The position numbers and the translations under genes were made by a program. A stretch of DNA of 64,000 bases from Vitrella brassicaformis CCMP3155 (Eukaryota; Protista; Chromerida), in the NCBI GenBank assembly GCA_001179505.1, contig CDMY01000477.1, positions 248,001 through 312,000 on the forward strand, in the 5' to 3' direction. The notes under the pieces are model-generated. The model did not search any database, was not told where the DNA came from, and was given only the letters and a program-made list of their open reading frames with translations. Below, piece by piece: positions 28,377-33,312 of the stretch (positions are counted from its first letter, which is position 1; each line of letters starts with the position of its first letter).

Positions 28377-31300
28377 CTAGCCAAAGCTCTCCGTGATGAG
28401 CCCAATGTCAAACCCCTCGGCCCGCAGCCCAGCACAAGAGCCCTCCAAGCACCTCACCACGGCAGCGTTGGCGCACGCAAAAATCTTCACCTTCTGGCCG
28501 CCGGGAGACACCACACGGCAGATCTGATAACGACCACACACACGCATACGGAGACATACATTGAGGATGCGCCTGTCGGCGTGTTCTGTCTGTGGTCATG
28601 GGTGAGAAACGCACCTGTCTGAGTTCGCTGTCGAATGACGGACGAACGGAAAATTTCACATGAAGTGGGGGGTCAGCACGCTGATGGACGAGGAGAATAC
28701 ACATACATACATGTCTCGGCTGTGTCAATTCCTCAGCTCACTCACCACGTCTTTTCTCGCCCTGTGTCCCCTGATGAGCGCCTGTATCTTCTTCACCGCC
28801 TCGTCCGTCTCCTCTACCGAGTACCTTCTCGGCCTGTCTGATGCCTCGTGTGGCTGCTCGTGCCCCGATGTCGGCTGGTCCTGGTTGCTACTGGCGATGC
28901 TCTCCATCACGCTACCGAAATAAGGCGTCCTGCGCCCCACGGCTGCCGGCCCTGCACGAGCCTGATAGCTTGTCCCCACCCCTGAGTCGAGCGATACTCG
29001 AGTGACGTCGCTCCCCGCATCCCTGCCCGTAGCCTTCATGACCTCGATGGATGCCGCTTGCAAGCCAAGAAGGAACAGCTTAATATGCGGTGGAGGGGGA
29101 AATTTCGCCGTCAGGTAGATGTGCAGGGTGACGTGCGAGCAAATTAGGGGATCCTGCGCCAGCTTGACGGCTTCCTCCGCGATCCATGCCATCTCGCTGA
29201 CGTTGCGGGAAATCCAGAAGAAGTGCGATACTCGGAAGATGGTGCGCTTGCGCGTGAGTGCAATAGCTCTCCTGGACTTGCTGAGGTCTGCCCGTGGCTC
29301 CTCGGTGTCCAGATGGCGATTGAACTGACGAGGGAATACGGATAAAGGGACACACCCCGTCGAGGGACAAAAATCCGGCTTACTTGCGCTTGCAGGAAGC
29401 CGAGAAATGGCGCAATGCCGGTGGAAGTGCCGACAAAGACGACGTTCTCTTGGTACGCGCTAAACTGGGCCGGCGCGCCTGCATTCACGACACATCAATC
29501 GACGAGAGAGAGACATTTACATGCACGCACGCGGCTCACTCACCGTACGGGCCGTCGATCTTGACTGATGGATAAAAGGGCACCGTGCGCCCCTGCTGGT
29601 CGCCCGCCGCAGACGCATTCGCCTCGTCACACATTCTGATCAGCTTGGAAGTCCTGTTTACACGTTGCCGGACCCGCCAACACACACACACACTCACATC
29701 GGTCCATTCGTTGTTCATATGTGACAAATGCACGTAGCCATGTGCACGCCCATACATACGTACCAGTTGCCGGCATTGCCGATCATCAGCCGAATGTCGT
29801 CCGTCGAGTGAGGGTGTGAGCAGATGGATAAAGGGTGGTATTCAAACGCAGATATCGCCGGGCAGTTGAGAAACAACACCTGAATGGACCGATCGATAAG
29901 GAGAAGGCGTACGTTGCATGTCTGTCTCCGTGTGTATATATGTCTCCTCTTGCTTGCCTGCCCGCATTGGTATTTGAATTGGTTTGGCCGGAAGAGAGTA
30001 AGGAAGACCACTGAGTGATCCTTAGCCACAAGAGCCCACTTGATGCGCACTGGATCAGCCAACCACACCCAGCCACGCATACACACACATCCCTCCATCG
30101 CCTACGCATTATCCGTACATACCGTCCCAAGTGAAGTATCGCCAGCTGCGAAGCAGCCTGCACAAATGCACTCGCAGAGACACCATTGCACACGTCGTGT
30201 GTGTGAGTATGCAAAGAGCACCTTTCGGCTGCGTAGCAGCACATGGCCGGCCCCATGACGACCAAGGCAAGAGGGAACCCAAAATTAAGCCACCCCACCA
30301 TCCCGTGCAGACACATGACGATGAAGTACCCCCACACCAGCACCACGTGAACATACCTGCACACACAGATAGACAGAAACAGTGACACACATATGTGTGC
30401 CATGGTAAAACTTTACCAGAAAAGCTCGAAGTTCTTGTTTCTGATGGATGGCACGGAAGTGACGCCGATTGCGATGATTATCAAAGTCAACACCACTCCT
30501 GCCACACACGCACAAACAGCAGCTGACTGCAAGGGCCCCCTATGCTGCATGGATAGAGAATGACACCTGTGACGCCAGGTATGGATGCGACCACCTCCAT
30601 GTATGAAGGCACTGCGTCGAACGAGCCGTTGTTGACGGCATCGTTGATGTCCTGCAGGTGGGGATATACACGTCAACAATTATGGTGCCGTCAATGCGTG
30701 CATGTCTAACATACATCGACTTCTTTGGTGCCCGACACAGACGGCACGGTGCCCCCGCAGTGCGCAGCAATGTGGATGACAGTGAACACGAGCACCAACT
30801 GGCACACACACACACACACACACACACATAAGTGTGAGAATGTCAGACAACCCTTGCTTTTCACTGTGTCTCACTCACCTGTCCAGTGAAGATGTGGACC
30901 TCCCGATGATGGTCCAAAAGGATGGAACATCGTCTGCAGCAAGCAGAGACGGCAGAGACACATGGTGTGTACAAAAGGAGGTGCTGTCTCGCATTTTCAC
31001 CGAAAAGGTGTCCCCCTCAGCCCCGTCAAGAGGCCCCTGCACATGGACAGCACGAGAATGCCGGAGAGCACCATCAACGCCATCGCCGCGCCACGAGCAA
31101 AGAAGAGACCTGACAAAGAGATGAAAACGGACAGATCGACCAATACCTGATGAGTGCATGTTGCATCCTTACCAACTCCAAAAACAGCCATCTTGTCTCC
31201 CTGCGTCAGAAAGTAAGACCCGTACCCAACCATGGCGGCCACAGCAACGACGGCCAGCAATATCCTGACATACAGCTCCCCCCGCTTGCTCTGACCCACC

Positions 31301-33312
31301 CACGACGACAGCTCCCACGCAGTGAAGCGCGACTCCCTCGAGGCGTTGCGCACCGACAGAGACACCTCCTTCTTCATCGTCGGGTGCCCATTATCCTCTG
31401 CCTCCATCGCTGGCGGCAAAGCTATCCGCTTCACCGACGGGCTGAGCGCCGTTTCTGTGGAGGGTGGTTGTGGCAGCCCGGCGGTCGGCGCGGTCGGCTG
31501 TGCTGGTGGTGTGTGGGTGGGGATTCGGGAGAGGATCGCTTGCAGGGAGAGGACACGAGGGATGTAGAAGTTGAGGGATGATGAGGGCTGCTGCGACGGC
31601 GCGTTGGGGTCTCCCCCGCTGACGTTGCTGCTCCTGCGGAACAGCAGCGCCTCCTGGAGCGAGTTGCGTCGGCTGCCGATGACGGCTATCAGCGCGGCAG
31701 AGCTCTTCGGCTCATCCTTCGCCACACCGCCGTGCTTAAACTGCAGCAGATTTCTTCCCAAGTCGCTGATCTCATCGGGAACGTCCATCTCGGCATCGCC
31801 ATCGGCTTCGTCGTCGTCGAGGGTCGAGAAAAGTCTGTCGAGCGGGGCGACCATGCTCCTTGGCGAGAAGAGCTCTGTATGCTGCGTATGCTGCGTGTTC
31901 ATGCCGTATTGCTTGACTGACTGCTGATCGGTGGCGGACGACGTGATGATCTTGCCCAGCTGCCGATTGAGGGCGGTCAGGATGATTTGGACTGTTTCTG
32001 GTTTGAGAGAGACTTCGAATTCGAGGCACGCTTCCTGCAGCATGCTCCTCATGATATCCTCTCTCAATGTCATCTCTTCTTTGCTTGTCGTCTCGTCGCG
32101 CCTGCATTCACGAACACAGAACGATACACAATCCACAATCAGTACTTATGTGTCAGTAATTCGCTTTCTTGGCAAACGGACTTTTTCTCAGCGTGAAACG
32201 GACTCTTGTGCTATGTGATAGAACTCATCGAACGACGCGTGAAGATGCATTCCCGCAACACATGAATGCGGTCAGTACAGGGCTGATTGGTCAGACTTTT
32301 GGTTGGTATATGAGTGATTGGTGAGTGATGAGTGAGTGATTGGTTTATGCGGTTCATTCTGCTTGTGAATAGAGTGATCGGGATGGGCTGATTGCTTNNN
32401 NNNNNNNNNNNNNNNNNNNNNNNNNNNNNNNNNNNNNNNNNNNNNNNNNNNNNNNNNNNNNNNNNNNNNNNNNNNNNNNNNNNNNNNNNNNNNNNNNNNN
32501 NNNNNNNNNNNNNNNNNNNNNNNNNNNNNNNNNNNNNNNNNNNNNNNNNNNNNNNNNNNNNNNNNNNNNNNNNNNNNNNNNNNNNNNNNNNNNNNNNNNN
32601 NNNNNNNNNNNNNNNNNNNNNNNNNNNNNNNNNNNNNNNNNNNNNNNNNNNNNNNNNNNNNNNNNNNNNNNNNNNNNNNNNNNNNNNNNNNNNNNNNAAA
32701 CCAATCACTCACTCATCACTCACCAATCACTCATATACCAACCAAAAGTCTAACCAATCAGCCCTGTACTGACCGCATTCATGTGTTGCGGGAATGCATC
32801 TTCACGCGTCGTTCGATGAGTTCTATCACATAGCACAAGAGTCCGTTTCACGCTGAGAAAAAGTCCGTTTGCCAAGAAAGCGAATTCAGTGTGCGTGTCA
32901 GAGTGTCTCTGACCCACTTGTGTTTGTCTATGTGCGGCAGCAACGAGTGGAGCCGCTGGGGCAGGTCGAGAGAGTTCTCAAAGGACGGCTGCATGCCCAC
33001 AACCAAACACCCAAACAAACGCACAAACACACTGAGTGTCAAAACATCCTTTCCACAGCTGCTCACCATGATATCTCTCGCGTCAAGGACGTCAGGACTT
33101 AGGTGATCATCATTGCTGTCCACATAATGGTCGTTCTTGTTATTCTCGGCTGCTGCCGCAGCGTTGGATGTCCTCCGGGACGCAGCGACGGGCGCCAGCA
33201 AATCCACATACGGAGCCGCACGGTTGTCAAGTGAGGCAAAAGCAGCCGCCAGCCGGTTGCAGTCGCTCGTGTAGCCGGGTGGCAGCCTCGCCTGGCTGAG
33301 GGGCCTCTCCAT
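28377..33312 (-). CDS. NADPH oxidase / RBOH-like flavocytochrome with IQ motif (5' end may extend to 35617)
   Basis: ARGAAMAL..SMCRGLLTGLR; heme His pairs VHIFTGQ..VIHIAAH and FELFWYVH..CLHG; EYHPLSICS; GNWT; KIDGPYGAPA; GTSTGIAPF; HFFWISRN; HIYLT; terminal ITESFG*. Confidence 0.88.
32158..32886. mobile_element. TIR element (MITE or DNA transposon) with >=189-bp terminal inverted repeats; interior in a gap
   Basis: 32158-32346 is the reverse complement of 32698-32886 with one mismatch seen; CAGT direct repeat at 32154-32157 and 32887-32890; lies in NOX intron 32102-32917. Confidence 0.75.
32398..32697. other. Assembly gap (300 N)
   Basis: N run. Confidence 0.99.

What the first reader, a model, noticed from the sequence alone, without database searches (positions are those of the whole stretch)
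28755..28787. Canonical IQ calmodulin-binding motif inside a NOX dehydrogenase domain
AVKKIQALIRGHRARKD matches IQxxxRGxxxR exactly. It sits at the end of a long insertion between HIYLT and the VRPSF (GRP-equivalent) motif of the NADPH-binding domain. Known Ca2+-regulated NOXs (RBOH, NOX5, DUOX) use N-terminal EF-hands, so an IQ-gated NOX would be a distinct Ca/calmodulin-to-ROS link. Function is inference.
Basis: partly seen in the sequence, partly recalled or inferred. Interest (0 to 1): 0.72.

Follow-up and report, generated by a model that had tools for sequence, protein, structure and literature searches.

The report
EF-hand-less NADPH oxidase with IQ motif
The alga Vitrella brassicaformis has two transcribed NADPH oxidase genes that lack the usual built-in calcium sensor and instead carry a conserved calmodulin-type IQ motif in the loop where human NOX5 docks its own sensor, so calcium control may come from free calmodulin; binding has not been tested.

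Summary
IQALIRGHRAR is encoded on the minus strand at 28787-28755, inside a 193-codon exon (28746-29324) of a 1011-aa NOX-family gene of Vitrella brassicaformis CCMP3155 (CEM16473.1).

- **Motif:** it fits the full 14-residue IQ consensus and passes Pfam's IQ cut-off only narrowly.
- **Transcription:** spliced contigs in two public runs carry the whole exon, so the motif is in the mRNA.
- **Conservation:** a 59%-identical paralog (CEM02763.1), backed by a full-length transcript contig, keeps the motif (IQALVRAHRAR) at the same place. The 71-residue linker before it is 18% identical, against 62% for the IQ helix, which matches the catalytic core.
- **No EF-hand:** none was detected in either protein or anywhere in the window.
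- **Added here:** the motif lies in the NADPH-lobe loop that in human NOX5 holds the REFBD, the helix gripped by NOX5's own calmodulin-like domain.

My best reading is a "split NOX5" whose calcium sensor is supplied in trans (confidence about 0.5). Calmodulin binding is untested. No other NOX with this motif turned up in 1.84 billion representative proteins. The scan noted the same kind of thing on another piece of this genome (s1-205690), probably the paralog. I rate it a new variant of a known kind, of moderate interest.

The parts
28755..28787 (-). IQ core IQALIRGHRAR (protein residues 928-938). With the following K-D-V it fits [FILV]Qxxx[RK]Gxxx[RK]xx[FILVWY].
28746..28817 (-). IQ helix with flanks, VEETDEAVKKIQALIRGHRARKDV (residues 918-941). 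It is 62% identical to the paralog and AlphaFold2 predicts a helix at low confidence.
28818..29030 (-). Ser/Gly/Arg-rich linker (residues 847-917), predicted disordered. It is 18% identical to the paralog and full of gaps. Its last four codons (28818-28829) encode a conserved RRxS.
29031..29099 (-). Helix A, PPPPHIKLFLLGLQAAS... (residues 824-846). It is nearly invariant in the paralog and lies at the same offset from the YLT strand as the RBOH segment ARSALIAMLQSL.
28746..29324 (-). Single 193-codon exon: the first half of the NADPH-binding lobe (FNRH...HIYLT), helix A, the linker and the IQ. Spliced contigs cover it without any internal joint.
   Evidence: X7 records 23, 24, 25; X1 record 2
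28681..28745 (-). 65-nt GT-AG intron directly after the IQ (...KDV|gtgagt). The paralog has an intron at the same position.
28615..28680 (-). Exon RADPPLHVKFSVRPSFDSELRQ, holding the GRP-equivalent VRP.
28377..28523 (-). Last exon ICRVV...KIFACAN...ITESFG plus the stop codon: the C-terminal strands of the NADPH lobe.
29384..31170 (-). Exons of the heme-binding transmembrane domain (four heme histidines), the FAD lobe and the start of the NADPH lobe.
28377..33312 (-). Whole coding span of the gene (1011 aa, CEM16473.1 / A0A0G4FPT2). One intron contains the N gap 32398-32697.

Best explanation
The gene encodes a NOX-type flavocytochrome: six transmembrane helices with two hemes, then FAD and NADPH lobes. 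It has no calcium sensor of its own.

In the surface loop of the NADPH lobe between the YLT strand and the GRP motif it carries three elements: a conserved helix A, a long disordered linker, and a complete IQ motif that runs straight into the conserved Asp and strand. In human NOX5 this same loop holds the REFBD, a self-inhibitory helix that is held by EF-hands 3-4 of NOX5's own calmodulin-like domain and displaced when calcium binds.

I propose that free calmodulin, or a calmodulin-like EF-hand protein, sits on the IQ helix and does in trans what the fused EF-domain does in NOX5. Calcium would change its grip, free the NADPH lobe and start electron flow to oxygen.

What is shown: the motif, its transcription, its conservation after duplication, its place in the fold, and the absence of detectable EF-hands. 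What is inferred: calmodulin binding, the direction of the effect, and superoxide production.
For: - **Identity:** the exon matches a 1011-aa Vitrella protein at 100%.
- **NOX family:** Pfam Ferric_reduct, FAD_binding_8 and NAD_binding_6 all pass their cut-offs. The four heme histidines and the TM2 Arg / TM3 HxxxH are aligned with NOX2 and DUOX1. The dehydrogenase model (pLDDT 73.6) matches the csNOX5 dehydrogenase domain at TM 0.89.
- **Transcription:** GT-AG joints at 28523|28615, 28680|28746 and 29324|29384, with continuous cover of 28746-29324, appear in runs X1 and X7 from two studies. Genomic runs X2 and X3 show no joints.
- **Paralog:** it keeps IQALVRAHRAR at the same place (Pfam 20.5 bits) and its whole coding sequence stands in a transcript contig.
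- **Constraint:** the IQ helix is 62% identical between the paralogs, the linker 18%, the core 60-67%.
- **Place in the fold:** HIYLTAKF aligns to hNOX5 627-634 and the C-terminal strands to 680-708. The REFBD is hNOX5 638-661 and binds EF3-4 (PMC11088703).
- **Spacing:** from the IQ to the RP motif the paralog is one residue longer and this protein two residues longer than the RBOH segment [LIV]Q[SA]LxHAKNGVD...RP. A profile of 37 NOX C-termini aligns EETDEAVKKIQALIRGHRARKDV with eegdarsaliamlqslqhakngvd.
- **No EF-hand:** Pfam finds none, hhalign and hmmsearch against RBOH N-termini find nothing, and there is no canonical EF loop in any frame of the window.
- **IQ-like flanks:** the segment resembles the IQ repeats of Chlamydomonas RSP23 beyond the core.
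Against: - No binding or activity data exist.
- The Pfam IQ score is borderline: 20.0-22.1 bits against a cut-off of 20.3.
- The paralog has Ala in place of the consensus Gly.
- Conservation is shown only between two paralogs of one species. No other species was found.
- The mapping of the IQ onto the REFBD is ambiguous. MAFFT aligns the RBOH helix with helix A instead, and the profile alignment covers the helix only for this protein, at 9 bits.
- AlphaFold2 gives the IQ helix a pLDDT of about 50.
- A basic amphipathic helix at an inherited regulatory site could match the IQ pattern without binding calmodulin.
Confidence: 0.5

Rival explanations
1. The helix is an inherited REFBD-type self-inhibitory or docking element that works within the protein, for example against the conserved N-terminal helices or the NADPH lobe. 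It does not bind calmodulin, and the fit to the IQ pattern is a by-product of a basic amphipathic helix.
For: The loop and its Asp/strand end are shared with RBOH and NOX5. The N-terminus has blocks conserved between the paralogs, such as REDIMRSMLQEAC..EFEV and NLLQFKHGG, whose function is unknown. The Pfam IQ score is borderline.
Against: The N-terminus shows no EF-hand or other family signal. The match covers the full 14-residue IQ consensus plus the typical flanks DEA...ARK[DE]V seen in true IQ repeats. The chance of the strict pattern is 0.0008 per protein of this composition.
Confidence: 0.2
2. The IQ binds a different EF-hand protein, such as a calmodulin-like protein, a centrin or a myosin-light-chain-like protein. 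That partner serves to localise or scaffold the oxidase rather than to gate it by calcium.
For: IQ motifs in general bind light chains and calmodulin-like proteins (established knowledge). The long flexible linker would suit tethering.
Against: The motif sits directly against the NADPH lobe at the site that controls NOX5 activity. That placement is more than a tether would need.
Confidence: 0.15
3. The motif has no function: it is a chance match in a tolerated loop insertion, or the protein is a ferric/metal reductase for which calcium control is irrelevant.
For: Genome-wide, some chance IQ matches are expected. The TM5 histidine pair has 13 residues between, where NOX2 and RBOH have 12. The GxGxxP and CGP motifs deviate: GTSTGIAPF and CAN.
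Against: The motif survived a duplication old enough to leave the adjoining linker at 18% identity, while the helix stayed at 62%. It is transcribed in both genes. The nearest relatives and folds are NOX, RBOH and DUOX.
Confidence: 0.1

Closest known systems
Human and cyanobacterial NOX5 (REFBD plus a fused calmodulin-like EF-domain; PDB 8U85, 5O0X)
   Same: Same catalytic core and dehydrogenase fold. A regulatory helix lies in the same NADPH-lobe loop between the YxT strand and GRP, ending at a conserved Asp.
   Different: NOX5 carries four N-terminal EF-hands that bind the REFBD in cis. The Vitrella proteins have none detectable, their helix fits the IQ consensus, and a ~70-residue disordered linker precedes it. 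The separately reported NOX5 calmodulin site (W674...) lies after GRP, is not an IQ, and is disputed (PMC7317449, PMC8777244).
Plant respiratory burst oxidase homologs (RBOH)
   Same: They are the best sequence matches outside Vitrella, at 26-28% identity. The loop DARSALIAM[LIV]Q[SA]LxHAKNGVD[IV]VSG shares the hydrophobic-Gln core. Counted from the IQ to the RP motif, this protein is two residues longer than RBOH and the paralog one.
   Different: RBOH has an N-terminal NADPH_Ox domain and EF-hands. Its loop lacks the basic residues of the IQ consensus and has no linker insertion.
Canonical IQ-motif proteins, e.g. the IQ repeats of Chlamydomonas radial spoke protein RSP23 (PDB 7JRJ chain K)
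   Same: The 21-residue segment TDEAVKKIQALIRGHRARKDV closely resembles the RSP23 repeat LDEAATKVQAAFRGYQARKEV. All other database hits to this part are multi-IQ proteins.
   Different: Here there is a single IQ embedded in a redox enzyme's nucleotide-binding lobe, not a repeat array or a lever arm.
NOX2 (gp91phox) and the fungal NoxA/B type
   Same: Same six-helix, two-heme, FAD/NADPH architecture without EF-hands.
   Different: These are controlled by cytosolic subunits and have a short loop without helix A or an IQ.

Membership tests
NOX / ferric-reductase-domain flavocytochromes | Ferric_reduct transmembrane domain with two histidine pairs for two hemes | tested here: met
   PF01794 scores 50.3 bits against a cut-off of 28. 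H465/H479 and H557/H571 are aligned with the NOX2 and DUOX1 heme ligands. The TM5 spacing is one residue longer than in NOX2 and RBOH.
NOX / ferric-reductase-domain flavocytochromes | FAD_binding_8 and NAD_binding_6 lobes with an FNR-like fold | tested here: met
   PF08022 scores 60 bits and PF08030 23.9 bits (cut-off 22.2). The model matches the csNOX5 dehydrogenase domain at TM 0.89, and also DUOX1, NOX2 and hNOX5. Motifs deviate: GTSTGIAPF, CAN in place of CGP, and a C-terminal ESFG.
NOX / ferric-reductase-domain flavocytochromes | Reduces O2 to superoxide or H2O2 rather than metal ions | not testable with these tools
   Only indirect evidence: the nearest relatives are NOX, RBOH and DUOX, and the TM2 Arg and the HxxxH of TM3 are conserved.
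Calcium-dependent NOX (NOX5 / DUOX / RBOH / NOXC) | EF-hand domain N-terminal to the transmembrane core | tested here: not met
   No EF-hand family appears in Pfam at E<=1. hhalign against RBOH N-termini gives probability 0.1-0.2, and hmmsearch gives negative scores. No canonical EF loop occurs in six frames of the window. The paralog's cDNA shows that no exon is missing.
Calcium-dependent NOX (NOX5 / DUOX / RBOH / NOXC) | Long NADPH-lobe loop with a REFBD-type helix before the conserved Asp and GRP | tested here: inconclusive
   The loop and its ends align. Which of the two Vitrella helices matches the REFBD differs between MAFFT (helix A) and the profile alignment (IQ helix).
IQ calmodulin-binding motif (PF00612) | Consensus [FILV]Qxxx[RK]Gxxx[RK]xx[FILVWY] | tested here: met
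   IQALIRGHRARKDV fits every position. The paralog IQALVRAHRARRDV has Ala in place of Gly.
IQ calmodulin-binding motif (PF00612) | Score at or above Pfam's gathering cut-off (20.3 bits) | tested here: inconclusive
   Scores are 22.1 and 21.8 on the exon, 20.0 on the full protein, and 20.5 on the paralog.
IQ calmodulin-binding motif (PF00612) | Binds calmodulin or a related EF-hand protein | not testable with these tools
   This needs a binding assay. The structure tool folds single chains only.

The most novel reading that the evidence does not exclude
The two Vitrella enzymes are natural 'split NOX5s'. Calcium control of ROS production is kept, but the sensor is free calmodulin docking on an IQ that evolved from, or replaced, the REFBD helix. 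This would be a third route of NOX regulation beside fused EF-hands and cytosolic subunits. It could also mirror the state before a calmodulin-like domain was fused to NOX.
Probability: 0.35. Interest if true: 0.75.

Novelty: new variant of a known kind. Interest (0 to 1): 0.58.

Why it matters
A recent evolutionary study concludes that calcium dependence through fused EF-hands was the first mode of NOX control, and that EF-hand loss went together with a switch to protein partners (PMC9421330). It mentions neither calmodulin nor alveolates.

An EF-hand-less NOX that keeps a calmodulin-type docking helix at the very loop used by NOX5 would show that the sensor can be supplied in trans. That would give a simple two-part system for testing how movement of that loop starts electron transfer. 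It would also add a calcium-to-ROS link in the photosynthetic relatives of apicomplexan parasites.

The limits are that it is known from one species only and rests on sequence inference.

Tried and rejected
- **Hidden intron:** I tested whether the long open stretch before the IQ hides an intron. It does not: contigs cover 28746-29324 without a joint.
- **Vestigial EF-hand:** a first hhalign placed LDRLFSTLDDDEADGDAEMD on the RBOH EF-hand 1, but at probability 0.12. A deeper RBOH profile aligned a different segment, so I dropped the idea.
- **ESM Atlas look-alikes of the N-terminus:** noise only, scores <=0.83.
- **Other NOX with an IQ:**
  - phmmer of the exon against 1.84 billion representatives gave only the two Vitrella proteins plus multi-IQ proteins without NOX domains.
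  - Two word searches gave 46 other NOX/RBOH, none with an IQ-like pattern in the loop.
  - The JGI metagenome scan gave nothing.
  - A single-IQ NOX at about 30% identity could still fall below the phmmer threshold.
- **First structure model:** the model of TM plus dehydrogenase with 9 sequences was poor (pLDDT 57.9). The 41-sequence dehydrogenase model was used instead.
- **Joined exons:** The spliced product used is the public record returned.

Full report
**Observation.** The minus-strand ORF 28725..29192 ends with ...EETDEAVKKIQALIRGHRARKDVVSELRN*. The core IQALIRGHRAR lies exactly at 28787-28755.
- Pfam's IQ model scores 22.1 and 21.8 bits on the exon (cut-off 20.3) and 20.0 on the full protein. 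The call is real but borderline, as is usual for a 21-residue model.
- With the next three residues the segment fits the complete consensus [FILV]Qxxx[RK]Gxxx[RK]xx[FILVWY].
- The strict pattern is the only one in all six frames of the window and arises in 0.08% of shuffles of this protein.

**Gene and organism.** A phmmer search of the 193-residue exon against 1.84 billion representative proteins returned a 1011-aa protein at 100% identity and a 910-aa protein at 60%.
- Both are unnamed products of Vitrella brassicaformis CCMP3155: CEM16473.1 / A0A0G4FPT2 on CDMY01000477.1, and CEM02763.1 / A0A0G4EWD1 on CDMY01000335.1.
- Both carry Ferric_reduct, FAD_binding_8 and NAD_binding_6 above Pfam's cut-offs.
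- The nearest solved relatives are DUOX1, NOX2, NOX5 and the csNOX5 dehydrogenase domain.
- A dehydrogenase-domain model built from 41 sequences (mean pLDDT 73.6, core above 90) matches csNOX5 at TM 0.89.
- The four heme histidines and the TM2 Arg / TM3 HxxxH are in place.

**Is the motif in the mRNA?** Yes.
- Runs X1 and X7, from two studies, hold contigs with joints at 28523|28615, 28680|28746, 29324|29384, 29477|29543 and further upstream. Nearly all have CT..AC ends, which is GT..AG on the gene's strand.
- Runs X2 and X3 hold the unspliced genomic form.
- X7 records 23-25 cover 28746-29324 without any joint. X1 record 2 joins the IQ codons to the next two exons.
- The exon therefore ends after ...RKDV at a GTGAGT donor and continues with RADPPLHVKFSVRPSFDSELRQ and then ICRVV...ITESFG*.
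- These runs are not recorded as RNA. The spliced form itself is the evidence.

**Conservation.** The paralog has DEAATKIQALVRAHRARRDV at the same place (Pfam 20.5 bits).
- Its whole coding sequence stands uninterrupted in a 3185-nt contig of run ERR558152.
- That contig maps to 17 genomic exons, with an intron directly after ...RRDV, as in this gene.
- Identity along the paralog alignment:

| Segment | Identity |
|---|---|
| Transmembrane core | 67% |
| FAD lobe | 67% |
| NADPH lobe, first part | 61% |
| Helix A (824-846) | 62% |
| Linker (847-917) | 18%, with 26 gapped columns |
| IQ helix (918-941) | 62% |
| C-terminus | 60% |

- The motif is thus held as tightly as the enzyme core while the sequence before it drifted freely.
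- The only conserved island in the linker is RRxS (914-917), ten residues before the IQ core.

**Where it sits.**
- HIYLTAKF (816-823) aligns with hNOX5 627-634, and the C-terminal strands (966-994) with hNOX5 680-708.
- The human NOX5 cryo-EM study places the REFBD at 638-661 of that loop. It shows that the REFBD links EF-hands 3-4 of NOX5's calmodulin-like domain to the Rossmann fold, that calcium makes EF3-4 displace it, and that the peptide is inhibitory (PMC11088703).
- In csNOX5 and RBOH the loop reads D-x19-D, for example DARSALIAMIQSLQHAKNGVD, followed by [IV]xSG...F.RP.
- The Vitrella IQ runs into the same Asp and strand (KDVRADPPLHVKF.RP). Counted from the IQ to the RP motif, the paralog is one residue longer and this protein two residues longer than RBOH's [LIV]Q...D...RP.
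- A profile of 37 NOX C-termini aligns EETDEAVKKIQALIRGHRARKDV with the whole helix.
- MAFFT instead pairs the RBOH helix with helix A, which has the same offset from the YLT strand.
- My reading is that the ancestral helix region was split or extended by the linker. NOX5 itself has an insertion (INS3) at this spot. The IQ takes the C-terminal, Asp-proximal part. This is an inference from alignments of modest score.

**No built-in sensor.**
- Pfam finds no EF-hand in either protein.
- Profile comparisons with RBOH N-termini are null.
- The window has no canonical EF loop in any frame.
- The N gap at 32398-32697 lies in an intron, and the paralog's cDNA shows no segment is missing there.

**Mechanism proposed.** Calmodulin, or a calmodulin-like protein, bound to the IQ replaces the fused EF-domain of NOX5. 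Calcium-driven rearrangement would release the NADPH lobe.
- A complete IQ suggests binding even without calcium (general knowledge of IQ motifs), giving a resident sensor subunit.
- The conserved RRxS next to the motif could let a basophilic kinase tune binding.
- None of this has been tested.

**Rivals.** These are a cis-acting REFBD-like helix without calmodulin, another EF-hand partner used for localisation, and a functionless match. The report sections give the evidence for and against each.

**What is known.** I found no paper describing an IQ motif in a NOX: the listed papers that share the terms NADPH oxidase, IQ motif and calmodulin do not describe one, and two papers mention Vitrella with NADPH oxidase, neither on this. 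A calmodulin site in the NOX5 dehydrogenase domain (W674...) has been reported and disputed. It lies after GRP and is not an IQ.

**Relation to the scan.** Note s1-205690 on another piece of this genome describes an EF-hand-less NOX with an IQ, probably the paralog.

**Verdict.** This is a new variant of a known kind, of moderate interest, limited by its single-species distribution and the lack of binding data.

Noticed in passing
window 29879-29956 (-): One intron of this gene is GC-AG rather than GT-AG (...TGCGGGCAG|gcaagc...attcag|GTGTTG). The spliced contigs of two runs confirm the joint.
   Followed up: partly
window 28818-28829 (-): A conserved RRxS (RRYS here, RRPS in the paralog) lies ten residues before the IQ core, inside an otherwise unconserved linker. 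It may be a basophilic-kinase site that modulates binding.
   Followed up: partly
window 29031-29099 (-): Helix A, PPPPHIKLFLLG[LM]QAAS, is nearly invariant between the paralogs and is modelled at pLDDT about 75-84. It has the same offset from the YLT strand as the RBOH/NOX5 loop helix. Its role is unknown.
   Followed up: partly
window about 30290-30335 (-), TM5 (position estimated from the frame listing, not mapped to the base): The TM5 heme histidines have 13 residues between them (YVH...LHG). RBOH and NOX2 have 12, seen as a one-residue gap in the alignments.
   Followed up: no
window 32157-32324 and 32750-32917: A repeat with read depth 10-25 times that of the gene starts at 32157. Near-identical copies flank the N gap 32398-32697 in opposite orientation. 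This is a dispersed repeat or an assembly problem inside the gene's intron.
   Followed up: no
window 31000-31170 (-): The long open frame reads through KDATCTHQVLVDLSVFISLSG, but the annotated product and the paralog's cDNA skip it as an in-frame intron.
   Followed up: partly
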